64,000 nt of DNA from Isurus oxyrinchus (taxonomy: Eukaryota), in assembly GCA_026770705.1 (NCBI GenBank), contig JANJGN010001130.1:1-64000 (forward strand), written 5' to 3'. The position numbers were made by a program, and so were the translations under genes. The notes beneath the pieces are model-generated. The model ran no database searches. It saw only the letters and a list, made by a program, of their open reading frames with translations, and was not told the DNA's origin. Shown here one piece after another: positions 13,321-50,748 of the stretch; within the stretch, counting starts at the first letter, position 1, and each line of letters opens with the position of its first letter.

Positions 13321-13534
13321 GTAAGTATGGACATCCTTCATTATACATTCGCTGGAACAGTCTATATTGTGCACAGCAGGATCCCATAGAAAGGTATTCT
13401 GATGAGAACCAGATCATCTGTAGTTTAGGGAAAAACACTAACCAGAAAACAGTTAATGACAGTTTCTGAACATTAACACTGGAGCTTTTTTTTCCAGCCA
13501 AGAAGCTGATAGAGCAGAGCATCATTCACAATAT

Positions 13535-14525: not shown

Positions 14526-14529
14526 ATTG

Positions 14530-18400: not shown

Positions 18401-18712
18401 TCTCCCTCAATACTGACCCTCCGACAGTGCAGCACTCCATCAGTACTGAACCTTCAACAGTGCAGCACTCCCTCAGTACTGATCCTCCAACAGTGCACCA
18501 CTCCCTCAGTCCTGATCCTCCAACAGTGCAGCACTCCATCAGTACTGATTCTCTGACAGTGAAGTACTCGCTCAGTACTGACTATGCGGCAGTGAAGCTT
18601 TCACAGTACCCACCCACCATCAGTACAGCAGGTCCTCAGTACTCACCCTCCAACAGGGCAGCACTCCCTCAGTACTGACCCTCCAACAGTGCAGCACTCC
18701 CTCAGTACTGAA
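15415..18712 (+). repeat. 33-bp minisatellite array (~100 units) with higher-order duplications
   Basis: Tandem units; source of the 578-aa and 369-aa repetitive ORFs. Confidence 0.97.
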
Positions 18713-18835: not shown

Positions 18836-19117
18836 ATGCACCACAGAATCTCTCAATTACTTCTCTTGATATGATTAACGCTTCATCGATCAATATAATT
18901 GAGGGGAATTCTGCAGTGATAATCTGCTCTGTCGAGAGCTTCCCAGCTTCTAACCTGACGTGGCGACATCTTAATGTCCCAATGAACAGAACAAGTTCCA
19001 ACAATGAGCTGTGGTTGGTGATTCCTCACGTTACATCCAGGGACACTGGAGACTATCAGTGTGTGGCAGAGAATGAACATGGAGCAGTGGAGGGGTTCAT
19101 AACCATCACTGTGGAAC
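18836..19117 (+). CDS. Gene A C2-set Ig domain 2 exon
   Basis: tttag|..|gtgagt, 282 nt, phase 1-1; DAPQNLSI..EGNSAVIICSVESFPASNLTW..DTGDYQCVAENEHG. Confidence 0.95.
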
Positions 19118-19149
19118 GTGAGTTACACAGAATTGAACGTTCTCGTGTT

Positions 19150-25440: not shown

Positions 25441-25509
25441 CATTCTTGGCACACAAAGGGTTAACAGTTTTCTAACTGTGCGAGGCAAAGAGATGCTTTC
25501 TAACTTGGT

Positions 25510-25656
25510 ACTAACCACTTCCTCATTTTGTCTCACAGTGACACATCAACCCTTTCTAATTAAACACACAGAGGGAGCAGCACAGGAAGAGGTCATTCAG
25601 CCCAAGCAGAGCGTGTGGGCAGTTCCTCCCCAGGCGAGCAGTCGGACAGGTCCTGG
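25510..25656 (+). promoter_or_regulatory. Extra promoter/exon-1 copy upstream of gene B
   Basis: PU.1-type site cacttcctcattt 25516-25528; donor gtaagt at 25657. Confidence 0.7.
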
Positions 25657-26099
25657 GTAAGTAACGGAACGATTGGAATTCACTTCCACCACCAACACCG
25701 TCCTTTGTTGATGTTGTGACTTTATAAAGACAGATTCCAATGATTGATGCCTTTGAAAGATTTCTACTGATTATTGAGATCTGGGTGTGGGGATCAAGTC
25801 TGTTGTACAGAACATCTTTCTAGCTCAAGGGATGAGGGAAGAGCAGGGACATGAGCTTTGGGGTGTCCTGAGCAGGTGAAAGGCGATATAGAAATGCAAG
25901 TCCTTTATTGTGTTACTTTCTTAAAGCCTTGTAACTCTCTGCAGAGCAACTATCATCCCACAGAGAATCAAATTAGTCTGTGAAGACATTGTCTAATAGT
26001 GGTTCTGATCTCTCGAGAGGTGTCGGACAAGAGGTGAGGTCTCGTTAACTCATTTCTCTTTCACAGCTTGAGAACGAATGAAATACCTGGGAGTGGACA

Positions 26100-26139
26100 A
26101 TGATCAGGAAATCTTACTTCCTCCTGTCACTTCTCCAAG
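26100..26139 (+). CDS. Extra signal-peptide exon (MIRKSYFLLSLLQ); orphan, or an alternative first coding exon of gene B
   Basis: Intact acceptor (cacag|26067), ATG and phase-1 donor; no V exon before the next promoter. Confidence 0.7.
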
Positions 26140-27719
26140 GTAATATCATTGTCAGCTCGGATAGATTTATGGCTAATCATCTTTGTAAAACATAATTCTT
26201 ATTGAGTGTGATTGGGAACAGATTCAGCAGTGAGCCAGTGTACAATCTCACACCAAGTCCCATTCACCCATCACCCCTGTGCTCACTGATATACACGGAC
26301 TCCCTGTCTGACAGCAGAATTGGAGGAGAGCAGAGGACTTTGAGGTTTGCATGGTTGGAGGAGAAAGTGATTGGAGAAGAGGAATGGAGGGAATGGAAAT
26401 TGAGGATGAGAGTCTTAAACCCGAGGCTCTGCTGGACTGGGAGCCAGTGCAGGTCAGCGAGTGGCAGAGGGTGTGAGGTGTTGAGTTGAGAAACAGTGAT
26501 AAATACTGTGGGATGAAGTCTATCCTGATGCTTGGACTCCGATAGCAAAGGAATGAAATTTGTATCTTTTGCTGATTTTAATCAGAATTTCCCATGAAGA
26601 CAACACAGCAGCTCCTAGAATAGACAGGCTGTTCAGTGTCACACTTCCTGTCCATTCTCACCTTGCTAGAAACTTCAATAAGGGAGCAAGATAACTGAAA
26701 GAGAGAAGGAAGGTAAAGCTGTCTGTGTGTAAAGGTGTCAATATTCAGTTTGCATATTTGTCTTTCTCTCGACACATGCAGAGCTCAGGCTAGAGGCACT
26801 TTGTTAGTGTGTTTCACAGTGTCTGCTGGAGTAGGGTCAGTGCTGAGCTTGGGGACAAGTCAGTCTACAATGCTGCATCGGAATCAACAATACAACAATA
26901 TGGGGTTTGGATCAGAAATAATCCCTTAGACAATGAGGATCCAAAGAGATTCCATAGACAATGAGGATCCAAAGAGATTCCTTAGACAATGAGGATCCAA
27001 AGAGATTCCTTAAACAATGAGGATCCAAAAATATTCCTTAGACAATGAGGATCCAAAGAGATTCCTCAGACAATGTGGATCCAAAGAGAATCCTTAGACA
27101 ATGAGGATCCAAAGAGATTCCTTAGACAATGAGGATCCAAAGAGATTCCTTAGACAATGAACATACAAAGTGCACCAATCAGATTGAATCAGATTAACCA
27201 ATCAGCTGTGTTGAGGAGCAGACAGGAATGTTAGGCTAATTAGTGATTCATGACGGTGATAATGGCGGGAGTTCTGAGGGCTCCTAATCCATTGTCCTGT
27301 CTTGTAAATCAGCACCTTAATACTGACCCTCCAACAGTGCAGCACTCCCTCAGTACTGATCCTCCAACATTGCAGCACTCCCTGATTAATGTCCCTCTGA
27401 CACTGCAGCACTCCCTCAGTACTGACCTTACAATAGTGCAACACTCGCTCAGTAATGACCATCCGACAGTGCAGCACTCCCTCAGTACTGACACTGGGGA
27501 GTTTCAGTCTACTCTGTGGGGCCGACGTCCCCTGAATCGAGTCTTGAACCCCACAACATTCTGACCCCCTGAATTTGGCTGTGAAACCCACTGACCCACA
27601 GGAGAAATTCCTGGTCAATGACTGTCCACCTGTGAGCAGAAATATCACCACAGGGTCAGGACACAAAGGGTTAACAGTTCACCAACATCTCAAAACATGA
27701 GCTGCTCTGTCACTTTGAT

Positions 27720-27862
27720 CCAACTTCCTCATTTTGACTCACAGAGACACATCCACCCTTTCTAATTAAACACACAGAGGGAGCAGCACAGGAAGAGGTC
27801 ATTCAGCCCAAGCAGAGCGTGTGGGCAGTTCCTCCCCAGGTGAGCAGTTGGACAGGTACTGG
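27720..27862 (+). promoter_or_regulatory. Gene B promoter and non-coding exon 1
   Basis: PU.1-type aacttcctcattt 27722-27734 abutting AP-1 TGACTCA 27735-27741; donor at 27863. Confidence 0.7.
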
Positions 27863-28312
27863 GTAAGTAACAGAACAATTGGAATTCACTTCCACCACCA
27901 ACACCATCCTTTGTTGATGTTGTGACTTTATAAAGACAGATTCCAATCATTGATGCCTTTGAAAGATTTCTACTGATTATTGAGATCAGGGTGTGAGGCT
28001 CAGGTCTGTTGTACAGAACATCTTTCTAGCTCAAAGGATGAGGGAAGTGCAGGGACATGAGCTTTGGGACATCCTGAGGTGGTGAAAGGTGCTATAGAAA
28101 TGCAAGTCCTTCATTGATTTATTTTTTTAAAGCCTTTTAACTCTCTGCGGAGCACCTATCATCCCACAGAGAACCAAATTAGTCTGTGAAGACATTGTCT
28201 AAAAGCAGTTCTGATCTCTTGAGAGCTGTCGGACAAGAGGTGAGGTCTCATTAACTCCTTTCTCTTTCACAGTTTAAGAGTCAGAAGCTAAAGGAATATC
28301 TGGGAGTGGACA

Positions 28313-28352
28313 ATGATCGGGAAATCTTACTTCCTCCTGTCACTTCTCCAAG
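28313..28352 (+). CDS. Gene B signal-peptide exon (MIGKSYFLLSLLQ)
   Basis: ATG 28313, CAAG|gtaat phase 1. Confidence 0.9.
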
Positions 28353-29399
28353 GTAATAACATCATCAGCTTGGACAGATTTATGGTGAATAGTCTTTGTA
28401 AAAGAACATTCTTATTGAGCTGTGATAGGGAACCGATTCAGCAGTGAGCCAGTGTACAAACTCACACCAAGTCCCATTCACCCATCACCCCTGTGCTCAC
28501 TGATATACACTGACTCCCTGTCTGACAGCAGAACTGCAGGACAGCAGAGACCTCAAAGGGTTTCAGGGCTGGAGGAGGTGACAGTGATAGGGAGTGGAGA
28601 GGGAGGATGGAGGGATAAGGAATCAATGAAGAGATTTTGAAAATTGAGTCATTGCTGGACTGGGAGCCAGTGTAGGTCAGCCAGTGACAGGGGAGCGATC
28701 GGCTGAATAGAGAATCAGGGATAAATCTGGGGGATGAAGTCTATCCTGATGCAAGCACTCCGATATCAATGCCCTGAAATTTTTCTCTCTTGCTGATTTT
28801 CATCAGAATTTCCCATGAAGACAACACAGCAGCTCCTAGAATAGACAGGCTGTTCAGTGTCACACTTCCTGTCCATTCTCACCTTGCTAGATACTTCAAT
28901 AAGGGAGCAAGATAACTGAAAGAGAGAAGGAAGGCAAAGCTGTCTGTGTGTAAAGGTGTCAAATATTCTGAGTTATCATGATTGTTTCTGATCTGCTGCA
29001 GAGTTTATATTTCATTGAAACTTATCACTTTGCAGCTCAGAGAGAGACCATTGACTCACTGCCTGAAAGGGCGGTGGAAGCAGATTCAACAGGAACTTTC
29101 AGAAGGGGAACTGGATAAATACTTGAAGGGGACATTTTGCAGGGTTGTGGAGGAGAGAGTAGAGGTTAGAGTGGGACTTATTGGACAGATCTATCAAAGG
29201 CCCAGCACAGGCTCGATGGGCCAAATGGCTTCCATCAGTTCCGGATCATTCTACAATCCGATAAATTAAGTCTCTTATCAGTAACTCTTCAGGCTCCTGC
29301 TGCAGGAATGGCTCTTTCAGAAGAGCAGGGAACAAGCGGTTTCTCATATCATGTTCATATTTATTGACAATTACATAAGTGTATGGAACTGTTGAATAT

Positions 29400-31500
29400 T
29401 TGAGTCTCTAAAGTGTGGATTTAACCTTCTGGTACACCCAGATCTTGTGCTGGTTACCTTGTCTGGAGGTGTCTTTAACTGCTCACAGTGATCTGTGGGA
29501 TTGTCACCCTTGAATGTTGTTCCTGATTTCATGTGGAATCTTCTCCTCGATGGAATAGGAGCGGGAATGGATCTGATTTATCCTCGGTTCCACCTCACCG
29601 CTGTGCCCTTGTGTGTTTGACTCCATAGGCCCTTGGTTCTGAACAAATCCTTGTCACCTCGGCTGGTGGTCATGAACCTTCTGTGGGATCCTGGATGTGA
29701 ACTTGTCCCAACTGTAAACTTGGCAACTCTGCACCTCCATTTTTATCATGAACATTCCTTATCTTCTCTTGTAGTTTTAAAAGTTGCCCTCTGGTTTCTG
29801 AGAGAGTAGAATGGGTAAGAGTAGCGAAATTGGTCACTACTGGCCCACCAAACATGATCTCTGTCAGTGATGGAATAAGGTGAGGTGATGGTGTAGTGGT
29901 ATTGTTGCTGGATGAGTAATTCAGAGACCCAGGGTAATGTCCTGAGAATATGGGTTCAAATCCTGTCATAATAGATGATGGAATTTGAATTTAATAAAAA
30001 TATGAAATTCAAAGTTTAGTGATGACCACAAAACCATTGTTGGAAATCCCACCTGGTTCACCAGTGCCCTTTAGGGAACAAAATTGTCTGGCCGCCATGT
30101 GACTCCAGACTCCACGTCAATGTGGTTAACTCTTACATTAGGGATGGGTAATAAATCCTGGCCTGGCCAGTGACTCCCACATCCCATGAATGAATTTAAC
30201 AAAGTTGCAGTTGTAGGTGTCGATCTCAGATGTAACATTGCAATGTGTGGATCTTGCTTGGTCTGTCTACATTTGAGAATTAGGGATTTCACTGTGTGAA
30301 TCATTCATTCAGCTAGGCTGTTAGATCTGGGGTAATGAGGAGAAGAAGTACTGTGATTGATATTCCAGATTATCTGTAATCATGTCCCTAGTTTCACCAC
30401 ATAAACTGAAAATAGTGCTTAGAGTGTGTGCACCAGTTGTGCTTAGTGTGTTGTGCTATTTTTGAATAACGGGATATCTGGTAAAGCTGTCGACGATGAC
30501 GATGATGTCAGTGACATGGACATGAAAGGATTCAGATGTGATTTTGGACTAAGAATGGGCAGGAATTTCCTGTGGAATCAGTGGTTCTTTGTGTTGTCTT
30601 GGCTCATCCTCTTGACAAGCCTCGTACTTCCCTACAACAACTTCAAGGTCATTGTTCATACCCGGCCAGTGACTGTATCTCTTGTGAGTCTCCTTGTCTG
30701 ATCTGTGCCCATGTGTGAGGGATGAAGTTGTTGAAGAATATAGGATCACAGATGCCCTGCCTGCCATTAAAAATGACTCCCTGGGAGATGCCTCGCTTAT
30801 CCCGATGAGGTCAAGTTGAATCAGGCCACCCTTTCAATGATATTTCCACAGTTCCTGTAGAATTTTTCACTGTTCCCTCTTGTAGCTGCTGTCATTTCTG
30901 TTGTGCTAAATATACTGGATCAATTGACAGACTTGCATTCTCCTGCAGCTGTAATGTTGCAGCTCCCTTGAAACTGCCAATACTGTTGAAACTTTCTGCA
31001 TATTTCAATGTTATGGCATGAACTGAGGTGATGGGGTAGTTTCTGAGGTTGACCCATGTGAGATCTGACAGATTCCTGGATTGTCACTAGTGTGAGGTCA
31101 CCGCATGCCGGTAGACTTGTAATTGCTCAGCCTTTAGCCTCCACAATGTAGAACATCGGTGACACCCAGGAGGATTGATTGTACTTGCACCCCAGGACTA
31201 TGGATTCTGCACATGGAGTTGGTGAAGTGTTGTACACAGCAGTAGGTTTCCCATTGCCTTCCATGTCCTTGGATACATGTCTTTGAAAATTTGCTGGTTT
31301 GGGATGGGGGAGGGGAATGTTGGCACTTGCCCCTGTGTCAATCTTGGCCAATAAAGGGGAGGTAGCAACTTTCTCAGGGCAGATAATTGGAATCTTGGCC
31401 AATAGTGCGGGTGATGTGACAGCATCTGTTCTCCGTGAGATTGATGGTGTAAAAGGTGTGAAATTGTTCTAAAATTGCAAAATACGTTGAGCACAAGTGC
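29400..31500 (-). mobile_element. Decayed Gypsy/Ty3 LTR retrotransposon pol (protease, integrase)
   Basis: AKIDTGASANI (aspartic protease); HWPGMNNDLEVVVGKYEACQ (integrase Zn region); interrupted by a SINE. Confidence 0.8.
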
Positions 31501-32310: not shown

Positions 32311-32864
32311 AGTTGTTGCCCTTTGACCCGCGACCCCAGCTCGAGTATTATTTTTGAGGGAATGTACAACCTCCTTAGATTTCTGACCAAAATGTCATTT
32401 GATTATTTTTATTGAGCGAATGCCAAGCCCCGATACCGAGCGAGAGCCTCCTCATTTGCTGAGTTTAAGGTGATGAGTCAGCCCCTTAGTCCGTAGAGGG
32501 GATTCTCCTCGGTAATGTGCAGCCTTGTTTGTGTCTCTCCACAAGCGCATGAGGGGTTTGTACAGAGGCTGCAGCGCTGGAGGGGGTCTGCACAGGGGTC
32601 CTGGCCTGTCCTGAGCCGGTTTTAGCAAGGACCACTCTGGCCATGGCAGCTGAAAGCCAGCCATTGGACAGACGGGGCCTGTCACAAGGAGCCTGTTAGT
32701 CACTCCCCCCCCCGTGTCTCCTGTGCTCGGATCCAGACCATGTTGGCTGGTGGATCTGGCTCAGGAAGGGTCCTCCCCATGGGACCCCCAGATGGAAGGT
32801 GGGTCGAGCAGGTCATTCACTTGCATGTTTATTCTGCAGCTTTAATATTTTAAGAAGGTAAGAA

Positions 32865-33600
32865 TGTAGGATCATAAGAAATAGGGACAGGAGCAGGCCA
32901 TTCGGCCCCTCCAGCCTGCTCTCACTGATCTGGTTGTGGCCTTAACTCCATTTTCCTGCCTGTCCCCCAAACCCTTGACTCCCTTGTCGATCAAAAACCT
33001 GCCTCACTCAGCCTTGAGCCTATTCAATGGCCCAACCTCCACTGCTCTCTGGGGAAGAGAATTCCACAGGCTAGCGCCCCTCTGAAAGAGGAAATTCCTC
33101 CTCATCTCAGTCTTAAATGGGGGAGCCCTCATTCCGAAACTGTGCTCCCTGGTTCTAGATTCCCCCACGAGGGGGAAACATCCTCCCAGCATCCACCCTG
33201 TCAAGCCCCCTCGGAATCGGATATGTTTCAATAAGGTCACCCCTCATTCTTCTAAACTCCAATGGATACAGGCCCAACCTGCTCAACATTTCCTCACAGG
33301 ACAAACCCTTTAATCCCAGGAATCAGCCCAGTGAAGCTTCTCTGAACTGCCTGTACACAATGTTCGTGTTACAATCTCACTAACGCCCTGTGCAGCTGTT
33401 GCAAGACTTCCCTCCTCTTAAACTCCATCTCTTCGCAATAAAGGCCAACATTCCACTTGCCTTCCTCATTCCGTGCTGTTCCTGAATGCTGACTTTCTGT
33501 GATTCATGTACAAGGACACCCAGATCCCTCTGTACTGCATTCTGCAGCCTGTCTCCAGTTAAATAATATTCTGTTTTTCTATTCTTCCTGCCAAAATAAT
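32865..33600 (-). mobile_element. CR1 LINE 3' fragment
   Basis: QRDLGVLVHESQKVS..KASGMLAFI; FPLVGESRTR..LWNSLPQRAVE. Confidence 0.9.
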
Positions 33601-33715
33601 TTGTTGCCATTCTCCTCAGTATTGACCATCCCCCCAATTCAGCCACATCTGCAAATATCGGGTTCAGTGGATCCATAAAACATCCAGAGTTAAATATTGA
33701 GATTTCTCTCCCCAG

Positions 33716-34081
33716 CTGAACCCTCACAAGAGTGGAAAGGTGACACTCCACGAGAGTTGACATCTCAGGAAGGTTCGTGTGTACAGATTCCATGTCATTA
33801 CAGTTATCCATTGTGTCTGGAAAACCAACCACGAGGTGGAGTCTGGTTTAATAATGAGGAATGGAGAACAACGTCTATAGCCTTTCACTCCAAGGATCAC
33901 AGTCACGAGTTACCACGGTTCCACCATCGGACCCGGCTGTCTGGAGACCTGAAAGATGGCGACTGTTCCCTGATTATAAACAACATCACATGGGAAGATG
34001 CAGGACCTTATTTTTTCAGAATAGAATTTGACAACAGTAATAGTTACAGCTACTATCCTGCAACCCAGCTTCACATTTCTG
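33716..34081 (+). CDS. Gene B Siglec V-set exon
   Basis: 366 nt, phase 1-1, open; YFFRIE with Arg at 34018-34020. Confidence 0.93.
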
Positions 34082-34809
34082 GTAAGTGCTGTGTTATAAT
34101 TACTCAACAATTCACATTCAACACTCAATGGGAAATAACGCAAACTGTGACGTTTACATATTAACACAAAACACAGCTTATTATAACACACTGTCTGATT
34201 CTCAATATCCTGGTGATAGCTTCCAGTTCACTCCTAAAGCAACCTCTAATAATCACTTTAATATCAATGATTAAATATATTGACTGTGTCCATCAATGTT
34301 ATCAGGTTATCCACTCGCGTCGATCTCTCTAATCCTGTCTCGAAGTCTGACATATCGACAAAAGAAAGATTCACATTTCTATGGAGCCTTTCACCACCTC
34401 AATATGTACCAAGTCACTTCACAGCCAATGAGCTGATTCCTGAATTGTAGTTACTGTTGTAATGTGAGAAACACAGCAGCCAATTTGCGCACAGCAATCT
34501 CCTTCCAATTGCAAAGTACTAAATGGCCCAGATCGCTGAGTGAATGATGAGGTAGTGCACTCCAAACTCTGGTCTGCTCCTCCACCCTCACCCACTATTA
34601 TCAGTTCAAGTGTCTCGGAGTGAACGTGTATTAAGCTGCGAGACAGAAACACCAAAGTCTCAAAGCAGGAAATTCTCTCCTGATCGTTGTAACCTCTCAG
34701 TTCTGATATCATCCTTGTAAAAGTGCTTTCTCTTGTGGGACTGTGGTTTCTATTTGAACTGATGCTTCACGTTATATTTCTCTAAAAGGATCCATTCTCT
34801 GTCTGTTAG

Positions 34810-35106
34810 AATTCACAGATAAACCCACGATATTCCCTGCTGAAATTATTGCAGGAAAGCGTGTGGATGTAAGCTGCCCCTTCAACACAACGTGCAATGG
34901 AACAGCAGCACCTGTCTTAACCTGGGACACTCCCACTGACGTACCTGGATCAGTCTCAAACACTGTAACTCAGCATGATGTCACTCTGTCCTATACTTCT
35001 GTTCTGACCCTGATCCCATCACTCAAACACCACGGACACACTCTCAGCTGCAGAGTGAGATATCCATCTGTTTCATCGGAGCAGACCCTCGTACTAACTG
35101 TGCAAG
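34810..35106 (+). CDS. Gene B C2-set domain 1 exon
   Basis: 297 nt, phase 1-1, nearly identical to 13024-13320. Confidence 0.93.
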
Positions 35107-35439
35107 GTAAGTTGAGATATCCTTCATTCTACATCAGCACTCCCTCAGCGCTGACCCTCTGACAGTGCAGCCCGTTCTCAGTGTCCACATTCTCAGACCT
35201 CTCAATTAGCTTCACAGTCCATAGAAGTTAATTGATCTTTATTTGATTGTTGCTGAATGAAGAGACAAGCTGTTTAAACTTTAAATCTCACACACATTAT
35301 TTTCCATGGCAACACATCCACCTATCAGAGACCACTTGCCAACCAATCAGCACTCTCTTCCCTTTAAATATAAATTGTTGTTCACTCTCTGTTGGTAAAC
35401 ATGCGATCTGTCTTGTTGAGTCCTGCCCTGATATCTGGA

Positions 35440-35582
35440 TATCACAATGAACAGAACAAGTTCCAACAATGAGCTGTGGTTGGTGATTCCTCACGTTACA
35501 TCCAGGGACACTGGAGACTATCAGTGTTTGGCAGAGAATGAACATGGAGCAGTGGAGGGATTCATAACCATCACTGTGGAAT
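35440..35582 (+). pseudogene. Gene B C2-set domain 2 remnant (acceptor and 5' half replaced by foreign sequence)
   Basis: MNRTSSNNELWLVIPHVTSRDTGDYQCLAENEHG..TVE|gtgagt; intronic homology to gene A stops at ~35245. Confidence 0.85.
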
Positions 35583-37265
35583 GTGAGTGTACACAGATTT
35601 CATCATCTGTCTCAGATTGAAACATGACACAAACACACACAAATATACAGACCTAAATAGACACCTGCAGATACACAATCCCTCGTATATGAGCACACAC
35701 AAAGACACAAACAAACACACTAGCACAATACTCCCCAGTGGGTTACCTGACCTCCCTCAGTGCTGCACTGGAGAGTTGACCTGGATTCTGAGATTTTTGT
35801 TCCCTTTCATGTTTATGGAAGAATATGGAAATTGCAAAGTCTATTACAGACACTCAGATGCATAGAGACACTCACAGATACTCTCTGTCTCTCCAACTCT
35901 CTATCCTCCTTTAAGAAGCTTCCTGAAACCTAACCCTTTGACCAGTCAATTGTCCCAACTCCTCCTTACATGAATCTGTGTGAAATTTTGTTTGAGTATC
36001 TGAGAGTAAGAGAGAGGTGGAGAGGTTTAGGAAGGGAATCCCTGTTGGTGAAAAGCTTACATCATGTTCTCACTTTTCCACTGCCCGTATTTCACCTGAT
36101 GTCCAATGTCCTTGTTTATAATAGGGATTGCCTATGTAAACGTCACGCTGTAGTTACACTGTACCACCAGTGGTGCACAGTAGAACTTAACCCTTGCATC
36201 TCTCAGCTTTTCAAGCAAATCCACTTCCCAGTTTGCCTCACAAGCTGTGAGTTCATCGGAATTAAATTATTTCTAAAACGGTAGATTTGATGTCATTTTA
36301 TTGAAAACTTCCTCAGTGCCTCCCTGAAGGGTTTACACTCTCTGGGAAGCAGGAATAGGCTGGATGTTGGGGAGTTCATCTTTTCCCAGAGAGCAGTGAT
36401 CCTCGGGAATGTGCTGTCTGTGGGTGTGGTGGTTGCTGTTGCTCTGTTGCCTTCAAGAGGGATCTGGAGTGGTTACTGACTGGGGGAGAGATCATGGAAG
36501 TGGAGAATGATACAGCACAGGAGGAAGCCATTCAGCCCATTGTGCCTGTGCCAGGTCTTTCAATGTTCTATCCCATCAGATCCACTAACCACCACTCCAC
36601 TTTGCCCCCATCTTCCTCCTTCAAGTGTTTATCCAATTCCCCTTTTGAAAGTTCCTATTGAATCTGCTTCCACCGCCCTTTCAGGCAGCACCTTCCAGAT
36701 CACAACAACTCGCTCTGTCAAAACAAATTCTCCTCATCTCCCCCTCCAGTTCGTCAATCTGTGTCCCTCTGGTTACTGACCCTCCTGCCCCGTAAATACA
36801 TCGATACTGTTCACCTCAACCACTCCCAGTGGGAGCGAGTTCCACATTCTCCCCTCTCTCTGGGTAAAGATTGGAACTGTTTATTAAGCGGGGGGTGTAA
36901 GTCCATGGGGGATTCCATCTCGATCCTGCCCGATTCGCACACACGTCCGAGATGGATTTCCATCCTTCACAAAACGTTTCCAGAATTTTCTACAGCACAA
37001 TCCTGTACACAGCGATGGAGAGAAACATTGGACAGGGAGTCCAACAGCACAATGATCCATTCTCACCAATGTTCCACGCTAAGGGGAAAGTTCCGATTGT
37101 CCACTCTTAGAGTGTTTACAGTGAAAACATTCATTCCACATTGAATCCCAGTGGATGGGTCAATATTACAGCAAATGTTGCAGTGATATGAAGCTTGATT
37201 GCTCAGCCAGAGTGAGAGATTGAAAGCGGAGAGTCAGTGATGATTTCTTTCTGTGTGTTCTCTAG

Positions 37266-37405
37266 ACAGTGGAGGAGAGATTCTGCACGTGATCCTGATC
37301 CTGGGAATACGAGTTGTGATATTCCTTGTGGCTGTGGCTATCACTATCGCTGGAGTCTGTGTCTGGGAGGAACAAACAGTGAAAGGAAGTCGACAGACTG
37401 TTTGA
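37266..37405 (+). CDS. Gene B terminal exon: TM with Arg and a short tail (SGGEILHVILILGIRVVIFLVAVAITIAGVCVWEEQTVKGSRQTV*)
   Basis: ttctttctgtgtgttctctag| acceptor; the phase-1 frame gives a ~25-aa hydrophobic segment with CGA (Arg) at 37310-37312; TGA 37403-37405; AATAAA 38389-38394. Confidence 0.85.
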
Positions 37406-37429
37406 AGAATTGTACAGCAACAATCTCAT

Positions 37430-38030
37430 CATGGAACAGAAGAACGGCATTTGGCCCATCGACTCCATGCCGTCTCTCTGTAGAGCAATCCAGTCAGTTC
37501 CATTCCCCCACTCTATCCCTGTATCTCTTCAAGTTTATTTCCCCTCAAGTGTCCATCCAATTTCCTTTTGAAATCGTTCATCGTCTCCGCTTCCACCATC
37601 CTCGTAGGCAGCGAGTTCCAGCTCATTACCACTTGCTGTGTAAAAAAGTTCCTCCTCACATCCCCCCTCTGCCCAAAACCTTCAATCTGTGTCCCCCAGT
37701 CCTTGTACCATCAGCTAATGGCAACAGCTTCTCTTTGTCTACCGTTATCTAAACCCATCATCATCTTGTACACCTCGATCAGATCCCCCCTCAATCTCCT
37801 TTGCTCCAAGGAGAACAACCCCAGCTTCTCCAACCCAACCTTGTAGCTAAAATCCCTCATCCCTGGACCCATTCTGCTCAATCTCCTCCCCACCCTCTCA
37901 AGGACCCTCACTTCCTTCCCAAAGTGAGGAGACCAGAACTGGACACAATACTCTAGTTGTGACCTAACCAGAGCTTTATAAATGTTCAGCATAACCTCCC
38001 TGTGTTTGTTCTCAATCCCTCGATTTATGA
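37430..38030 (-). mobile_element. CR1 LINE 3' fragment
   Basis: YKALVRSQLEYCVQFWSPH..LFSLEQRRLRGDLIEVYK. Confidence 0.9.
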
Positions 38031-38751
38031 AAATCTTATTCTTTCCATCAGCACAAACAGCAATTTCCAAGCGGACTCCCATCAGCAGACAGAGTGCAAT
38101 GAAACATCGGCATGCCTGCTTCTTAATGTACGGAGAGAAACCTGGAACGAGAGATTCTCCTTCTTCTCCTCAGCAAGCTGAAACTTTTCCTTATACCTGG
38201 TGCTCCCCAGTCCTGCTGTGTGGACACATCATAACCACGGCATTGTCTGGCTGTGTGCAGCCAACATGGTCGAATAGGAATGAACAGAAATGCGACATTG
38301 CTAAACTCTGTTCTCTGATTGGAATGTGCTTTCTGAATACTGCACCTTTTTAATGCTGCGATAGATTGTAGGAGGCATTTGGGTTATGAATAAAATTACA
38401 TTGATTAACTCAAGTGATTAAAATGCTCAGCCTGTTCTGTAGATATTTATAGATTAAAATTCTTATTTTGCAGCCAAATTCTTGGCTCAAAGACATTACT
38501 TCATGTTGTCACATTTTCTCCATCATATGAATTCCATTGCCCATCTTTATAATAGAAATTTCCAATGTAAACATGTCACATTGTAGTTGCACACTCCTGC
38601 CAGTGGTGGTGCCATTCCAAAGCTGTCTTGCTGCACTGACACAGTGAGAATTATTCTTGACTTGTACATGATGTTGTTGTTACACAGACATCAGGCGGAA
38701 TCTTGGGCAGTGCCTAGAATGCACTTAGGACATTGCGGACCACAATCAGAA

Positions 38752-39730
38752 CTGACAGTGCAGCGTTTCCTCAGTGCTGACCCTCCGTCAGTGCAGCGCT
38801 CCCTCATTACTGTCCCTCTGACAGTGCTGCACAACCTCATTATTGACCCTTTTCAAGTGCAGCACCCCGTCAGCACTAACCTTCTGACAGTGCAGCATTC
38901 CCTCATGGCTGACAATCTGACAGTGCAGCACTCCCTCAGTACTCACCCACCCACAGTACAGCACTCCCTCAGTACTGATTCTCTGACACTGTATCCCTCC
39001 CTCACTACTGACCTTCCGACAGTTCAGCACTCCCGTGGTACAGACTCTCTGACAGTGCAGCACTCCCTCAGTACTCAACCTCCCACAGTGCAGCACTCTA
39101 TCAGTACTCCCACTGTGCTGCGCAAGTTGTTTCAATCAAGATTGGTGCCCAAAGAGGGAGGTTTCATTGCTACATCATTGAAATCAGTGAAAATTATTTT
39201 TAGGCTTACGGGAACAAGACTTAGTTCCTCAAATCCTTTCTTTTGCAATAACACACAGTACAAGAATCTCTGTTTAAATAAATTCCAGTTAAACTTTGCC
39301 ATGAAAGGATATCTGCTCTTACTCCGCTCTACCTCAGTATTAACCATCCCACAGTCCGGCACCCCCTCAATACTGAGCCTCCGACTGTGTGGAACTCACT
39401 CAGTACAGACACACTGACTGTTCAGCACTCCCACATTACTGACCATCTGATAGTGCAGCACTCCCTCATTACTGACCCTCTGACAGTGCAGCACTCCCAC
39501 ATTACTGACCCTCTGACAGTGCAGCACTCCCTCACTACAGTCCCTCCTACATTGCAGCACTCCCTCATTACTGAACCTCTGACAATGCAGCACTCCCACA
39601 TTGCTCACCCTCTGATATTGCAGCACCCCCACATTACTGACCCTCTGCTAGTGCAGCACTCCCTCAGTACTGACCCTCCCACAGTGCAGCACTCCCACAG
39701 TACTGTCCCACTGACAGTGCAGCACTCTCT
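38752..39730 (+). repeat. Degenerate 33-bp minisatellite arrays
   Basis: Tandem units, interrupted at ~39120-39330. Confidence 0.9.
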
Positions 39731-39954
39731 CCGTAATGATAACAGGGATCGTTGAAATGAATCATAAGGCCAGAGACCTGTATTGGGAACTCTTATCGCC
39801 TGAGTTTCAGCCTCCGAGGTGAGGGGGAGGAGTCTAATCCCATGGAGCCAATGGAGAAGCTTCATGACTATTGATGCCCATATATGAGCTGACAGATCAT
39901 CAGATGGTAAACGTTTTGCTGAGAGCACAAAACATCCTCGATCTTCTCACTGGT

Positions 39955-40099
39955 TACCCACTTCCTCATTTTGTCTCACAGTGACACATCCACCCTTTCT
40001 AATTAAACACACAGAGGGAGCAGCACAGGAAGAGGTCATTCAGCTCAAGCAGAGCGGGTGGGCAGTTCCTCTCCAGACGAGCAGTCGGACGGGTCCTGG
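39955..40099 (+). promoter_or_regulatory. Gene C promoter and non-coding exon 1
   Basis: PU.1-type cacttcctcattt 39959-39971; donor at 40100. Confidence 0.7.
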
Positions 40100-40549
40100 G
40101 TAAGTAACGGAACGATTGGAATTCACTTCCATGACCAACACCGTCCTTTGTTGATGTTGTGACTTTATAAAGACAGATTCCAATGATTCATGCATTTGAA
40201 AGATTTCTACTGATTATTGAGATCAGGGTGTGAGGCTCAAGTCTGTTGTACAGAACATCTTTCTAGCTCAAGGGATGAGGGAATTGCAGAGACATGAGCT
40301 TTGGGACGTCTTGAGGTGGTGAAAGGTGCAATAGAAATGCAAATCCTTCAATGTTTTTCTTTCTTAAAGCCTTGTAACTCTCTGCAGAGTACCTATCATC
40401 CCACAGAGAATTAAATTAGTCTGTCAAGACATTGTCCAAAAGCAGTTCTGATCTCTTGAGAGCTGTCGGACAAGAGGTGAGGTCTCATTAACTCCTTTCT
40501 CTTTCAGAGTTTGAGAGTCAGAAGCTAATGAAATATCTGGGAGTGGACA

Positions 40550-40589
40550 ATGATCGGGAAATCTTACTTCCTCCTGTCACTTCTCCAAG
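40550..40589 (+). CDS. Gene C signal-peptide exon (MIGKSYFLLSLLQ)
   Basis: tttcag|40508, ATG 40550, phase-1 donor. Confidence 0.9.
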
Positions 40590-41649
40590 GTAATATCATC
40601 GTCAGCTTGGACAGATTTATGGTTAATAGTCTTTGTAAAAGATCATTCTTATTGAGCTGTGATTGGGAAACGATTCAGCAGTGAGCCAGTGTACAAACAC
40701 ACACCAAGTCCCATTCACCCATCACCCCTGTGCTCACTGATATACACTGACTCCCTGTCTGACAGCAGAATTGGAGGAGAGCAGAGATCTCAGAGGGTTT
40801 TAGGGTTGGAGGAGGTTACAGGGATCGGGAGTGTAGAGGGGGGATGGTGGGGTAAGAAATCGATGATGAGAATTTGAAATTTGAGTCATTGCTGTACTGG
40901 GAGTTAGTGTAGGTCAGTGAGTGACAGGGAAGCGATCGGCTGAATAGAGAATCAGGGATAAAAACTGGGGGTTGAGGTCTATCCCGATGCTAGGACTCGG
41001 ATAACAATGCCCTGAAATTTTGTGTCTTTTGCTGATCTAAGTCAGGACTTCCCATGAAGACAACACAGCAGCTCCTAGAATAGACAGGCTGTTCAGTGTC
41101 ACACTTCCTGTCCATTCTCGCCATGCTAGATACTTCAAAAAGGGAGCAAGATAACTGAAAGAGAGAAGGAAGGTAAAGCTGTCTGTGTGTAAAACTGTCA
41201 AATATTCTGAGTTATCATGATTGTCTCTGACCTGCTGCAGAGTTTAAATTTCACAGAATATTAGCACTTTGCAGCTCAGAGAGAGACCATTGACTCACTG
41301 CCTGAAAGGGCGGTGGAAGCAGATTCAACAGGAACTTTCAGAAGGGGAACTGGATAAATACTTGAAGGGGACATTTTGCAGGGCTGTGGGGGAGAGAGCA
41401 GAGGTGAGAGTGGGACTAATTGGACAGATCTTTCAAAGGCCCAGCGCAGGCTCGATGGGCCAAATGGCTTCCTTCTGTTCCAGATCATTCTACAATCTGA
41501 CAAATTAAGCCCCACATCAATAACTCTTCAGGATCCCGCTGCAGGGATGGATCTTTGACAAGGACAGGGAACAAGAGGTTTCTGGTATCATTTTCATAAT
41601 TCTTGACAATTACATAAATGTATAGATCTGTTGAATATTTAAGTCTCTA

Positions 41650-44600
41650 AAGCATAGAGGTAATCTGCTGTTACGCCCAGGTCTTGTGGTGGGAACTTTG
41701 TCTGGAGGTGTCTTTAATTGCTCACATTGATCTGTGGGATTGTCATTCTTCGATGTTGCCCCTTGTTTCAATTGGCATTTTACCCTTGATGCAACTGGGG
41801 AGGCTTTAAACTAACATGGCAGGGGATGGGATCCCAAGAAGAGGTTGACCAAAGGGAGATGCACAGCCAAAATTAGAAGAGAGAGCAAATGAACCTGGAA
41901 GGCAGAGAAATTATTGGCAGAAGATAGAATGGCAAAGTTGGATTGCAATTATTTTAATGCAAGGAGTCTGACAGACTTGCATTCTCCTGCTGGTGTGATG
42001 TTCCAGCTCCCTTGAAATTGCCAATATTGTTGAAACTTGCTGCATATTTCAATGTTATGTCATGAACTGAGGTGATGGAGTAGTTTCTGAGACTGGGACA
42101 GACATAAATCCTTTGGCTTTCGGCTGGTCCGGACAATCCTGGCAGTGGGTGGGGCCAGAAAATCCCACCCCTTGGGACATTTTCAGTTTATTTGATGTGC
42201 CCAGAGAGATCAATAAAGACCTCAATCCATAATTTATTGGCAAGCCACGTCAGGATATGTGTGAGAGGTAGAATATCGATCACCGCTCCTCGTCTCACCG
42301 TGCACATCATCGCCATTTCCTGGTTTGTCAGTCACCACATGTATATGTTCCTGATGGGATAGTGGATGGTCATTCTTATTGCTTGAAGGTTCCCCGTTGT
42401 GTCGGGTTAGTTTGGATCAGCACACGGCTCTCTGTAGCGGCATCAGCCTTTGCTCTAGTGCCCTGCCGCTGTCAATGGCCCTTTCTGCCACAAGCCTTGC
42501 AGGATTGGTGGAAAGCTGGGCATTTCCTTGGTGCTTGCAGAAGGCCACACCTTCCACACGTCTCACTAGGTCTGGATGTTCTAGTGAGTGTGTCAACAAT
42601 TGATGTTGTACTGAGGACCTGTAAGCTTCGTTGACCTGCGAGGATCACTTCGTATTTATGTCCATCCTTGAGTAGCTCTTCAATGCTGTAGGTTTTGGTC
42701 TTATCTAGCAGATCTTTCTGGAAGGCTTCCATGGGAGTGGATGCGATCACCAACTCAACAACTCTGTCTGCAGGCTCTGTGTTTGAAATCACAGTGCGTA
42801 CCCTTTTCTCTACATCGGCTGATGAAGTGGTCTATGGATTGTGTAAGCTGATGAAATGACATAAACTCTAGTTGATGAATATGAAGTTTAACCTGATTCT
42901 GAACCTGTCTTCCAATGTCGTCCATATCTATTGGGGATCCTTTCGCTCTTCTGCTGTTAATCCTGACGTGTTCAGCCTGTGTAGACCTTCATTCCCAATC
43001 GCGAGGTGAATTTTTATGGGTGGCTCGTCTGGTTCAGTCACAGCTGAATCAGGAAACCAGAGCTCTGTACGCTGTTTAAACATTCTGAATTCAGATAGTC
43101 GGTCAGCTACATCCCAGTTCGGGAATTTCGTGGACATTCTGACAATATTCCTTTGACCTTCCTTCTCCTACAGGATCTGGGATGAGTGTCGCTTTAGCCC
43201 CTTTCGTGCGCTTTTCCGAAGCTCCGCCCACGGAGACGGGTTGTGGCAGGAACACACCACAGAGTAAAGGAGTCTTTGTTTTTTATTCAATTTGCTGTTC
43301 AGCAATCTCGAAGCCGCCCGTTATAATCACTAACTTCTCTGGGCTGATTTTTATAACGGTTTTTGTGTGTTTGACTCTCCCTCGCTCACTATCGATCCAG
43401 CCCACACCCTGGTCACTTGCCTTCCCTGACTGAGCTAACCCGCTGCTGGTCCTGGCGATACACACTGTCCCACTCACTGACCTACAGGCCGTGTGCTGTA
43501 ATCTCACCACGAGGGATCCGTCTGCTCCCCAGCTCTTTACTTGTGCTCTGTCCCATCACTGTGTCTTCAAAGGTTTCCTGAGCAGTCAGTACACTGCGAT
43601 TTCAACCCTCTCTGATGCTGTGTCTCTGTTCTGGTCTGACCGAAGCGTCGAGGGTCGTCTCATGTCATGTAGCTCGATCTAAGGCTGTTCACCACATCAT
43701 ACCTGTACTGAATCTTGCTGCCAGAATGTTTGGCCACCGCTGATCACCATGTTGTGTTTTTATAATGATATAAAGGCACCAGCCACTGATACGGAATTGG
43801 GTAAATGCATTGTGGGTTCATTTATTTAGAACAGGGACATGAGAACAAGGATAGAAAGCTGGGAGACACCTGCGGCCAAACTGTGTGAGCTGTGTTCTGC
43901 TCACAGGCCAAAGTGAAACTTGGACTGGATGGTGTTATCATCCCAGCTGATGTTACTACTGGGCAAGTCAGATCCCAGGGTGGAGCTCAGCTTGATAGGT
44001 CCTAACTTTTATTTTTTATTTAGGAATGTGGAGTGCGGCTACTGAACAGAGTCACAGGAATCATCTGATGACCTTCTAACAAAAGAATAAAACATTTATT
44101 AAACTAGGAAAGACTGATTATATTACATTACTCCTTCACCCAGACCTATACATTTACAGATTCATAAGTAGAATACAAGTTACAATAACTATCTTATACT
44201 CTCATGTTCACACTAAGTACACAGTTCATGCAAACCAATAGACGACCTGTGGTCAGGGACACCACATTCTGTAACCAAGTGATAGACCCCAATTGGAACA
44301 AATGCTATGGGTTTCAGCTCAACTGACTCCAGACACTTGTTACACCATGAGGCAACTGGTCTTACAAAACTGTATCTTTCACATGAGAGTTTCCAATCTC
44401 TACTCGTCAAGTGCTCTCTTTGGAATCTTCTCTAACATGACACTTTCACTCAGAGACCTTCCACAAGGGTCCACTTCCATGATTTCAAACTCTCCTTCCC
44501 ATGTTCCTGCCCCCTGGATCGCCACATGCATTCAGCCTTCCTTCTACGCGTTGTCTTTCCAATGCTCAGTCATGCCAATGGAACACCATGGCTTCACATG

Positions 44601-46744: not shown

Positions 46745-47119
46745 TTGGACTATCACAAGTGTGGAAAGTCAACACTCCACGAGAGGTGACAGCGCAGGAA
46801 GGTTCGTGTGTACAGATTCCATGTAATTACAGTTATCCATCATATTTAGTAGCGAGATCAGCAGTCGGAATCTGGTATATGAGAAGGAATTTGGAAACAT
46901 GGAATGAACGGTCTATAGCCTTTCACTCCAAGAATCACAATCACAAGTTAACACGGTTCCACCATCGGACCCGGCTGTCTGGAGACCTGAAAGATGGTGA
47001 CTGTTCCCTGATTATAAACAATGTCAGACGGGAAGATGCAGGATATTATTTATTCAGAACAGAATTTGACAGCAGGAATAGATACAACGACCGTCCTGAA
47101 ACCCAGCTTCACGTTTCTG
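46745..47119 (+). CDS. Gene C V-set exon 1 (intact, most divergent V)
   Basis: gtag|..|gtaagt, 375 nt, phase 1-1; YYLFRTE with Arg at 47056-47058. Confidence 0.9.
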
Positions 47120-49450: not shown

Positions 49451-49567
49451 ATTTGTTGCCATTCTCCTCAGTATTAACCATCCTCCAAATTCAGCCTCAT
49501 CTGTAAATATCGGGTTCAGTGGATCCACAAACCATTCAGAGATAAATATTGAGATTTCTCTCCCCAG

Positions 49568-49935
49568 TTGGACTGTCACAAGAGTGGAAAGGTGACACTC
49601 CACGAGAGGTGACAGCGCAGGAAGGTTCGTGTGTACAGATTCCATGTCATTACAGTTATCCATCGTGTCTGGAAAACCAACCGCGAGGTGGAGTCTGGTT
49701 TAATAATGAGAAACAGATTCCCTGGGCTCCCATTGCCTTTCACTCCAAGGATCACAGTCACCAGTTACCACGGTTCCGCCATCGGACCCGGCTGTCTGGA
49801 GACCTGAAAGATGGCGACTGTTCCCTGATTATAAACAACATCTGACGGGAAATGCAGGACCTTATTTTTTCAGAATAGAATTTGACAATGGTCCGAGCCA
49901 TAACTATTACCCTGTAACCCAGCTTCACGTTTCTG
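49568..49935 (+). pseudogene. Gene C V-set exon 2, disabled
   Basis: AGA>TGA at 49843-49845 plus a 1-nt deletion a few bases later (368 nt versus 369); splice sites intact. Confidence 0.9.
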
Positions 49936-50748
49936 GTAAGTGCTGTGTTATAATTACTCAACAATTCACATTCAACACTCAATGGGAAATAACACAATCT
50001 GTGATGTTTACATATTAACACAAAACACAGCTTATTATAACACACTGTCTGATTTTCAATAACCTGGTGATAGCTTCCAGTTCATTCCTAAAGCAACCTC
50101 TAATACTCACTTTAATATCAATGATTAAATGTATTGACTGTGTCCATCAATGTTTTCGGGATATCCACTCCCACTGATCTCCCTAACCCTGTTTGACAGT
50201 CTTACATATCGACAAAAGAATGATTCACATTTCTTTAGCACCTTTCACCACCTCTGTCGGTCGCAAATGGATTCACAACCAATGAAATAATTCCTGAAAT
50301 GTAGCCCTTGTTGTAATATGGGAAACACAGCAGCCAATTTGTGCACAGGAAGCTCCCAGAAACAGCAATGTGATCAATAACCTTATCACCTGCTTTAAAT
50401 GCCGGTTCAGTGATTGGTTCAAATGGATTCTCTCCTGCTGGCGACAGGATAGAATTTAAATCTGGCAGATTTCGGAGAAAGTAACAAGCCAGTGTGTCAG
50501 GAACTGTGAGCTGCTCCCCCACCCTCACCTGGGATTGTCAATTCAATTGTCTCAAAGTGGAAGTGAATTCATCTGAGTGACAGAAACTCCACTAAGTCTG
50601 AAAATAGGAAATTCTCTCCTGATCATTGTAATCTCTCAGTTCTGATATCATCCTTGTAAAAGTGCTTTCTCTTGTGGGACTGTGGTTTCTATTTGAACTG
50701 ATGCTTCACGTTATATTTCTCTAAAAGGATCCATTCTCTGTCTGTTAG

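What the first reader, a model, noticed from the sequence alone, without database searches (positions are those of the whole stretch)
37266..37405. Unannotated Arg-containing TM exon defines an activating receptor
The ORF track does not show this frame. Read in phase 1 after a strong pyrimidine-rich acceptor, it gives ILHVILILGI-R-VVIFLVAVAITIAGVCVW, then EEQTVKGSRQTV*. It is unrelated to the TM exons of A and C. Established: a basic TM residue with a short tail marks receptors coupled to DAP12 or FcRg (Siglec-14 Arg; Siglec-15/16 Lys; LILRA Arg).
Basis: partly seen in the sequence, partly recalled or inferred. Interest (0 to 1): 0.82.

Follow-up and report, generated by a model that had tools for sequence, protein, structure and literature searches.

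The report
Shark Siglec-like receptor's arginine membrane exon
This 140-base stretch is a real, spliced last exon that gives a shark Siglec-type immune receptor a membrane anchor with a buried arginine and almost no tail, the usual mark of an activating receptor that signals through a separate adaptor chain; public annotation of other sharks already holds the same design, and its function is untested.

Summary

Contigs of two public runs join 35106 to 37266 exactly (GT..AG), skipping a truncated Ig pseudo-exon. Those contigs differ from the window at a few bases. They therefore show this splice form in a very close ortholog or paralog, not strictly at this locus.

A search of 1.84 billion proteins found the same membrane-plus-tail module at the C-terminal end of shark receptors only. 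Together with two word searches, 15 such models were read. They come from great white, two catsharks, bamboo, epaulette and whale shark. The ILGIR motif is invariant in all 11 that were aligned with the window's exon. Carriers include Siglec-like, multi-Ig "CD22/CEACAM-like" and a two-domain Ig protein.

Gene B shares its leader, V-set and C2-set exons with neighbours A and C, which have uncharged membrane exons; A also ends in an ITIM-like motif.

Best reading: B is the activating, adaptor-coupled member of a paired Siglec-like cluster. The adaptor cannot be read from sequence.

It is not new as a gene model. RefSeq annotates 270-273 aa equivalents in other sharks, and this scan described the cassette earlier on other DNA of this genome (s1-300793).

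The parts
28313..28352 (+). Probable leader (signal peptide) exon of gene B: ATG plus 13 codons and 1 base, phase-1 donor GT at 28353
   Evidence: Sequence. The identical exon occurs upstream of each gene copy (5 copies, 0 expected by chance). It matches the N-terminus of S. canicula RefSeq model P0010. Its splice to the V exon was not seen directly. A second candidate leader lies at 26100.
33716..34081 (+). V-set (Siglec-type) Ig exon, 366 nt, phase 1-1, with the YFFR arginine
   Evidence: Pfam V-set 2.9e-11 and Ig_CD22 6.7e-10. Best solved relatives are Siglec-5 (1.4e-13), sialoadhesin, MAG and CD33, with YFFR and the three Cys aligned. Splice sites read.
34810..35106 (+). C2-set Ig exon, 297 nt, phase 1-1
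   Evidence: Pfam C2-set_2 4.7e-7. About 97% identical in protein to genes A and C. A transcript contig covers 34812-35104 and then jumps to 37264.
35447..35575 (+). Truncated second half of a further Ig exon (pseudo-exon), skipped
   Evidence: Only the C-terminal half of the domain is present (full version seen in P0002/P0003). The nearest AG would give the wrong phase. The contigs skip it.
35107..37265 (+). Intron removed in transcripts (2159 nt, GT..AG)
   Evidence: Joint 35104->37264 'cut +2' in runs X1 (side 163) and X2 (side 21).
37266..37405 (+). The finding: coding part of the terminal exon, with short stalk, transmembrane helix with Arg, 12-residue tail and TGA stop
37310..37312 (+). 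CGA codon of the intramembrane arginine (motif ILGIR)
   Evidence: Invariant in the window's exon and the 11 homologs aligned with it.
37406..37426 (+). Start of the 3' untranslated part of the terminal exon
   Evidence: Contig record 3 of X1 runs 37264-37426 without a break.
37427..38050 (.). 624-nt transposon-derived insert in the 3' UTR of this genome, absent from the transcript contigs
   Evidence: The joint 37426->38051 has CA..CA ends, so it is not an intron. The insert has repeat copies elsewhere in the window and a retroelement-like ORF on the minus strand.
38051..38399 (+). Rest of the 3' UTR (runs on to at least about 38441). Candidate poly(A) signals are AATAAA at 38389-94 and ATTAAA at 38417-22
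   Evidence: X1 contig record 3 covers 38051-38399 with 6 differences and 42 further letters. Sequence.

Best explanation
Gene B is a four-exon gene encoding a 280-residue type I membrane protein of the Siglec family. The exons are the leader (28313-28352), V-set (33716-34081), C2-set (34810-35106) and terminal exon (37266 onward). The last exon supplies a transmembrane helix with one buried arginine, about 7-10 residues below the outer face and 18 above the inner face. It also supplies a 12-residue cytoplasmic tail with no tyrosine. A receptor of this shape cannot signal by itself. Inferred: the arginine pairs with the membrane aspartate of a dimeric ITAM or YxxM adaptor (FcRgamma, DAP12, DAP10 or CD3zeta type), which is needed for stable surface expression and passes on an activating signal when the V-set domain binds a sialylated ligand. 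B is the activating partner of its tandem neighbours A and C. They have nearly the same ectodomain but uncharged membrane exons, and A has an ITIM-like tail. The membrane exon is a conserved cassette that sharks use on several Ig-superfamily receptor families. Shown here: the exon, its frame, its splicing in a very close homolog, conservation of the Arg, reuse of the cassette, and the paired arrangement. Inferred: adaptor coupling, the activating sign of the signal, and sialic acid binding.
For: Exon anatomy and frame. Exact GT..AG junction 35106^37266 in contigs of two runs; one 850-nt contig covers the C2 exon, the TM exon and the 3' UTR. Homologs with the same module at the C-terminal end: 7 by phmmer against 1.84 billion proteins (E down to 7.5e-12), with more from word searches. 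They include C. carcharias P0020 (270 aa; 84/92/87% identical over V, C2 and TM) and S. canicula P0010/P0011 (272/273 aa). NCBI names some of these 'Siglec-14' or 'CD33-like'. The ILGIR Arg is invariant in the window's exon and all 11 aligned homologs, while the tail varies in length (6-13 residues after the conserved Trp/Cys that ends the hydrophobic stretch) and never has Tyr. The V exon is a Siglec V-set with the sialic-acid Arg and Cys pattern aligned to Siglec-5. Paired arrangement: C2 exons of A, B and C differ at 8 of 297 bases; A and C have uncharged TM exons and A ends in SVYGNL. General rule that a basic TM residue plus no ITIM marks adaptor-coupled activating receptors: PMC4701786; for Siglec-14/15/16: PMC7226832.
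Against: No adaptor was examined here. Two papers state that the FcRgamma chain is lacking in cartilaginous fish (PMC4016189, PMC5742104); only an unchecked note of this scan (s1-863553) says otherwise. The transcript contigs carry consensus bases, not B's own, at 34878, 34978 and 34989, and they lack the 624-nt insert. Expression of this very locus is therefore not shown. The runs are only guessed to be RNA, although exact intron removal argues for RNA. The tail starts with two Glu and has zero net charge, which is unusual for the inner side of a membrane anchor. The splice from leader to V exon was not seen.
Confidence: 0.7

Rival explanations
1. Tailless decoy: B is made and reaches the membrane but does not signal. 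It only competes with the inhibitory neighbours A and C for ligand or for pathogens, and the arginine is tolerated or serves only for retention and turnover.
For: The tail has no motif at all and varies in length between species. No adaptor was shown here, and the literature denies FcRgamma in cartilaginous fish (PMC4016189).
Against: ILGIR and several other membrane positions are invariant across three shark orders and several receptor families. That is hard to explain for a passive anchor. A lone buried Arg normally destabilises a single-pass anchor unless paired (established knowledge; PMC4701786).
Confidence: 0.12
2. The B locus itself is silent or decaying, and the observed transcripts come from a paralog or from the ortholog of a sister species. 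The exon here would then be a good copy of a functional cassette, but not an expressed gene.
For: The contigs differ from the window at 4, 6 and 6 bases in the three pieces. They carry the family-consensus bases where B is unique. A transposon sits in B's 3' UTR and is absent from the contigs. The scan notes other 140-letter copies elsewhere in this genome.
Against: All four B exons are open, with canonical splice sites. X2 holds about 99% identical contigs of nearby unique non-coding DNA (records 7, 8 and 14), so a close relative or the same species was sampled. An insertion in a 3' UTR does not silence a gene by itself.
Confidence: 0.1
3. The arginine pairs with a partner that is not an ITAM adaptor, for example a DAP10-like YxxM chain or another receptor chain with an acidic membrane residue. 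The output would then be co-stimulatory or something else rather than classical ITAM activation.
For: Arg in the membrane is also used by NKG2D with DAP10 (established knowledge, from memory). The adaptor repertoire of sharks is poorly described. The sequence gives no means to choose.
Against: None specific. It is a variant of the main reading.
Confidence: 0.08

Closest known systems
Human Siglec-14 (paired with Siglec-5) and Siglec-16 (paired with Siglec-11)
   Same: Siglec V-set plus C2-set ectodomain that is nearly identical to a neighbouring inhibitory gene. One basic residue in the membrane helix (Arg in Siglec-14), a short tail without ITIM, and a tandem gene cluster. NCBI even names the S. 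canicula equivalent 'Siglec-14 isoform X2'.
   Different: The membrane exon has no detectable similarity to any non-shark protein. The pairing arose independently in sharks. B has two Ig domains, not three. The adaptor is unknown, and DAP12 coupling is not shown.
RefSeq models of other sharks: C. carcharias XP 'CD33-like' P0020 (270 aa) and 'Siglec-12' P0018/P0019; S. canicula P0010/P0011; S. torazame XP_072325011.1 (P0001)
   Same: Same exon order and the same ...VQ-D-SGGE junction. The membrane cassette is 74-91% identical, with the Arg in place.
   Different: None is identical to B: V is at most 87%, C2 at most 96% and TM at most 91% identical. They are computer models without published study.
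FcRgamma-coupled receptors of the leukocyte receptor complex (LILRA, OSCAR, GPVI, FcalphaRI, NKp46)
   Same: Arg in the outer third of the helix, followed by about 18-20 hydrophobic residues and then acidic residues plus Trp at the inner face (from memory). Short tail.
   Different: Different Ig domain families and no sequence homology of the membrane part. Coupling is untested.
Siglec-15
   Same: An activating Siglec with a basic membrane residue, conserved from fish to mammals (PMC7226832).
   Different: Siglec-15 uses Lys. Its V domain is a much weaker match (2.7e-7 against 1.4e-13 for Siglec-5). It is a single conserved gene, not a member of a tandem paired cluster.

Membership tests
Siglec family (sialic acid-binding Ig-like lectins) | N-terminal V-set Ig domain of the Siglec type | tested here: met
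   Pfam V-set 2.9e-11 and Ig_CD22 6.7e-10. The top 18 solved relatives are all Siglecs, led by Siglec-5 at 1.4e-13.
Siglec family (sialic acid-binding Ig-like lectins) | Conserved arginine on strand F that binds the sialic acid carboxylate | tested here: met
   GPYFFRIE aligns with GSYFFRVE of Siglec-5. Shown by alignment only.
Siglec family (sialic acid-binding Ig-like lectins) | Three-cysteine pattern of the V-set (intrasheet pair plus interdomain Cys) and the matching extra Cys in domain 2 | tested here: met
   SCVQIPC...DCS aligns with LCVLVPC...NCS of Siglec-5. The C2 exon has SC..TC..SC.
Siglec family (sialic acid-binding Ig-like lectins) | Binding of sialylated glycans | not testable with these tools
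   Needs a glycan array with recombinant ectodomain.
CD33-related Siglec subgroup | Closer to CD33-related Siglecs than to Siglec-1, CD22, MAG or Siglec-15 | tested here: inconclusive
   Siglec-5, sialoadhesin, MAG and CD33 all score within 1e-13 to 1e-11. No tree with tetrapod Siglecs could be built. The literature says fish lack this subgroup (PMC7226832, on teleosts).
Adaptor-coupled activating immunoreceptors (DAP12 / FcRgamma / DAP10 / CD3zeta partners) | Single basic residue inside the transmembrane helix | tested here: met
   Arg at 37310-12 within a 29-residue hydrophobic stretch. Invariant in homologs.
Adaptor-coupled activating immunoreceptors (DAP12 / FcRgamma / DAP10 / CD3zeta partners) | Short cytoplasmic tail without ITIM, ITSM or ITAM | tested here: met
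   12 residues and no Tyr. Homologs have 6-13 residues after the end of the hydrophobic stretch and no Tyr.
Adaptor-coupled activating immunoreceptors (DAP12 / FcRgamma / DAP10 / CD3zeta partners) | An adaptor with a membrane Asp exists in the same organism | not tested
   Only an unchecked scan note (s1-863553) reports an FcRgamma gene in this genome. Papers PMC4016189 and PMC5742104 say it is lacking in cartilaginous fish.
Adaptor-coupled activating immunoreceptors (DAP12 / FcRgamma / DAP10 / CD3zeta partners) | Physical association, and adaptor- and Arg-dependent surface expression or signalling | not testable with these tools
   Needs co-expression and mutant experiments.
Paired activating/inhibitory receptor cluster | Near-identical ectodomain in a neighbouring gene with an uncharged membrane helix and an inhibitory tail | tested here: met
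   C2 exons of A, B and C are about 97% identical in protein, and the V domain is 84% identical in protein. A and C have uncharged TM exons. A's last exon ends SVYGNL, which fits the ITIM consensus. C's tail was not checked in detail.

The most novel reading that the evidence does not exclude
The ILGIR exon is a mobile 'activating cassette' specific to elasmobranchs. It has been moved by exon shuffling onto at least three unrelated Ig-superfamily ectodomain families: Siglec-like, multi-Ig CD22/CEACAM-like and a two-domain V-C2 protein. In each case it converts an inhibitory gene unit into an activating one, and all carriers feed one dedicated adaptor. In gene B it appears to have replaced the uncharged TM exon, because a relic of the inhibitory tail exon still lies downstream at 40013-40099. 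This would be an independent invention of the paired-receptor principle in a lineage where published work denies both CD33-like Siglecs and the FcRgamma chain.
Probability: 0.4. Interest if true: 0.6.

Novelty: new member of a known kind. Interest (0 to 1): 0.42.

Why it matters
It shows that the paired activating/inhibitory design known from primate Siglec-5/14 and Siglec-11/16 also exists in a shark Siglec-like gene cluster. It is built there with a membrane exon that has no detectable relative outside sharks and is shared by several receptor families. Published surveys say that fish lack CD33-type Siglecs (PMC7226832) and that cartilaginous fish lack the FcRgamma chain (PMC4016189). A conserved Arg cassette in sharks therefore points to an adaptor system that has still to be defined, and it gives a direct handle (Arg mutant, co-expression) to find it. 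For annotation, it shows that a 46-codon terminal exon decides the sign of the receptor and is easily missed by ORF length thresholds.

Tried and rejected
1. Chance ORF or wrong frame: rejected by the splice junction and the homologs. The longer overlapping 171-aa ORF 37237-37752 is in a frame that phase-1 splicing cannot reach.

2. The exon is part of a transposon: rejected. The repeat starts only at 37427, after the stop. The exon has no other copy in the window.

3. The 37426^38051 joint is a second intron: rejected, because its ends are CA..CA on either strand.

4. The half Ig exon at 35447-35575 is part of the mRNA: rejected. It has the wrong phase and the contigs skip it.

5. A relic of the A/C-type TM exon in B: none found.

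6. Pfam, NCBIfam and PDB sequence searches with the TM exon gave nothing.

7. Papers on shark Siglecs, shark DAP12 or shark FcRgamma: none found that describes this.

8. A ray protein (P0091, Hypanus sabinus) has an Arg-containing TM that aligns weakly with the Arg in register (E 0.031 for the single comparison). This is too weak to claim homology.

No DNA of the homologous loci could be fetched, and dN/dS or exon-against-intron conservation of the cassette across species could not be computed.

All searches were exon by exon or used natural database proteins.

Full report
**1. The observation**

Window 37266-37405 was read directly. A polypyrimidine tract (tttctttctgtgtgttctctag) ends in AG at 37264-65. 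From 37266 the frame that begins with the last two bases of a codon (phase 1) gives:
- a short stalk (D-SGGE);
- a hydrophobic stretch of 29 residues with one Arg (CGA, 37310-12);
- the tail EEQTVKGSRQTV;
- TGA at 37403-05.

The ORF listing shows this frame as a 50-aa ORF (37253-37405). A Kyte-Doolittle scan picks the segment as one of only two TM-grade windows between 35.1 and 39 kb. The exon has no second copy in the window.

**2. Gene context**

The window holds tandem Siglec-like genes.
- Gene A: V at about 12.2 kb, C2 at 13.0 kb.
- Gene B: V 33716-34081, C2 34810-35106.
- Gene C: two V exons at 46.7 and 49.5 kb, C2 at 50.8 kb.

B's V exon hits Pfam V-set and Ig_CD22, and its C2 exon hits C2-set_2. 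Against solved structures the V exon matches Siglec-5 best (1.4e-13), then sialoadhesin, MAG, CD33 and Siglec-8, -10 and -7. The sialic-acid arginine (YFFR) and the Siglec cysteine pattern are aligned.

All B exons are phase 1-1 with canonical sites.

A 40-nt leader exon (ATG at 28313, donor at 28353) is conserved upstream of every gene copy. It equals the N-terminus of the S. canicula model P0010.

The four exons add up to 840 coding bases, or 280 residues. Every search was by single exon reference or with natural database proteins.

**3. Splicing**

The look-up of sequencing runs found only small-share holders, coded organisms A to C. Laid on 32400-38399, two runs of organism A (X1, X2) show the joint 35104->37264, 'cut +2', ends GT..AG.

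One 850-nt contig of X1 covers three pieces:
- 34812-35104 (4 differences);
- 37264-37426 (6 differences);
- 38051-38399 (6 differences).

The half Ig exon at 35447-35575 is skipped. Only the second half of that domain survives there, and the nearest acceptor would break the frame.

The second joint, 37426^38051, has CA..CA ends. It marks a 624-nt repeat insert in this genome's 3' UTR, not an intron.

Caveat: at 34878, 34978 and 34989 the contig carries the family-consensus base, not B's own. The transcript is therefore from a very close ortholog or paralog. The splice form is shown. Expression of this very locus is not.

**4. Relatives of the exon**

phmmer of the 45-residue exon product against 1.84 billion representatives gave 8 hits. 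Seven were real, all at the extreme C-terminus of shark Ig-superfamily proteins. The eighth was a spurious repeat protein.

Names:
- S. torazame: CD33-like (XP_072325011.1), 'Siglec-12', and one hypothetical protein;
- Chiloscyllium punctatum: 'Siglec-13' and CD22-like;
- Hemiscyllium ocellatum: CD22-like;
- Rhincodon typus: sialoadhesin-like.

Word searches added further carriers:
- S. canicula P0010/P0011 (272/273 aa; one is named 'Siglec-14 isoform X2');
- C. punctatum 'CEACAM5-like' and 'sialoadhesin-like';
- great white shark P0018/P0019/P0020.

P0020 (270 aa) has the same V-C2-TM build and the same ...VQ-D-SGGE junction. It is 84, 92 and 87% identical to B over the three exons.

In an alignment of B's exon with 11 of these carriers, ILGIR and several further membrane positions are invariant. 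The tail varies in length, from 6 to 13 residues after the end of the hydrophobic stretch, and has no tyrosine.

Pfam shows that the carriers have at least three ectodomain builds:
- Siglec V plus C2;
- 8-9 Ig_2/Ig_3 domains without a Siglec V;
- a small V-plus-Ig_3 protein.

No protein outside sharks was found.

**5. Pairing with A and C**

A and C have uncharged TM exons, 64% alike to each other and ending in CVRK. A's last exon ends in SVYGNL, an ITIM-type motif.

The C2 exons of A, B and C differ at only 8 of 297 bases.

The V exon is much more diverged:
- B against A: dS 0.135, dN/dS 0.7;
- B against the first V of C: dN/dS 1.27;
- flanking introns: 4.7-6.4% divergence.

This is the fast, relaxed or diversifying pattern usual for ligand-binding domains of immune receptors.

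In a tree of the C2 domain (93 rows, poorly resolved) the cassette carriers do not form a clade. They sit among inhibitory forms of their own shark order, and B is next to A with SH-aLRT 90. This fits either repeated cassette swaps or gene conversion of ectodomains, as in primate Siglec pairs. The data cannot tell which.

The repeated segment upstream of each gene begins with a copy of the inhibitory tail's first exon (27782, 40013 and others). A relic of an inhibitory tail thus still lies 2.6 kb downstream of B's stop, while no A/C-type TM exon is left in B. This suggests that the cassette replaced the neutral TM exon in an inhibitory-type unit. This step is inference.

**6. Mechanism**

By the established rule, a receptor with no ITIM and a basic residue in the membrane helix associates with DAP10, DAP12 or an Fc-receptor gamma chain (PMC4701786). 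Siglec-14/15/16 follow it (PMC7226832).

On that rule B is most likely an adaptor-coupled activating receptor. The Arg would pair with the adaptor's membrane Asp, and the adaptor's ITAM would carry the signal.

The Arg lies in the outer third of the helix, with 18 hydrophobic residues below it. From memory this resembles FcRgamma/zeta-coupled receptors more than DAP12-coupled ones, but that is a lead, not a test.

Two papers state that the gamma chain is lacking in cartilaginous fish (PMC4016189, PMC5742104). An unchecked note of this scan (s1-863553) reports an FcRgamma gene in this same genome with a 99% identical great white protein.

**7. Novelty**

The kind is known, and the gene model exists in public annotation of sister species. 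This scan already described the cassette on other DNA of this genome (s1-300793).

No paper in the searched library describes shark activating Siglecs or this cassette. Reviews on fish say CD33-type Siglecs are absent (PMC7226832).

Hence this is a new member of a known kind, of moderate interest. The open question is which adaptor the cassette uses.

Noticed in passing
window 37427-38050: A 624-nt transposon-derived insert sits in the 3' UTR of gene B. It is absent from the transcript contigs of organism A (joint with CA..CA ends), while the DNA-like run X6 (organism B) holds its 3' part. It is a lineage-specific or polymorphic insertion.
   Followed up: partly
window 35135-35175; 13534-18711; 38751-39740; also 6748-7049, 9142-9237, 27315-27495: A 33-bp satellite (unit about ACAGTGCAGCACTCCCTCAGTACTGACCCTCTG). 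One unit lies right after B's C2 exon. At the same place in gene A it has grown to a 5.2-kb array inside the intron. The depth of this unit in run X6 is enormous.
   Followed up: partly
window 35447-35575 and 18982-19143: Genes A and B both keep only the second half of a third Ig exon, and homology starts at the same point in both. The truncation therefore predates the A/B duplication. Full copies of this domain are repeated several times in related shark proteins (P0002, P0003).
   Followed up: partly
window 9560-11102, 25498-26763, 27720-29555, 39957-41794, 61476-63037: A repeated 1.3-1.8-kb segment ahead of each gene carries a copy of the inhibitory tail's first cytoplasmic exon and then the leader exon. 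The duplication unit therefore cuts through the tail of the preceding gene. The copy at 25498-26763 has a leader (26100) with no gene body of its own before the next copy.
   Followed up: partly
window 33716-34081 vs 12255-12623 and 46745-47119: The V exons diverge faster than the neighbouring introns and the C2 exon (dN/dS 0.7-1.3). The second V exon of gene C (49549-50018) is read in two frames, which indicates a frameshift.
   Followed up: partly
P0098 (Chiloscyllium plagiosum, 'Siglec-11'): This RefSeq model has the Arg cassette in the middle of the protein, followed by another C2 exon. It looks like a read-through that joins two neighbouring genes.
   Followed up: no
P0091 (Hypanus sabinus); P0049, P0056, P0059, P0065 (skates): Ray and skate Siglec-like proteins also have short-tailed forms. 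One has a different Arg-containing helix that aligns weakly with the shark cassette. The others have a Lys at the outer edge (WKC...) and 6-8-residue tails. These may be batoid counterparts of the activating form.
   Followed up: partly
literature vs scan note s1-863553: Published surveys (2014, 2017) say the FcRgamma chain is lacking in cartilaginous fish. A note of this scan reports an FcRgamma gene in this genome and in great white shark annotation. This is worth settling.
   Followed up: no
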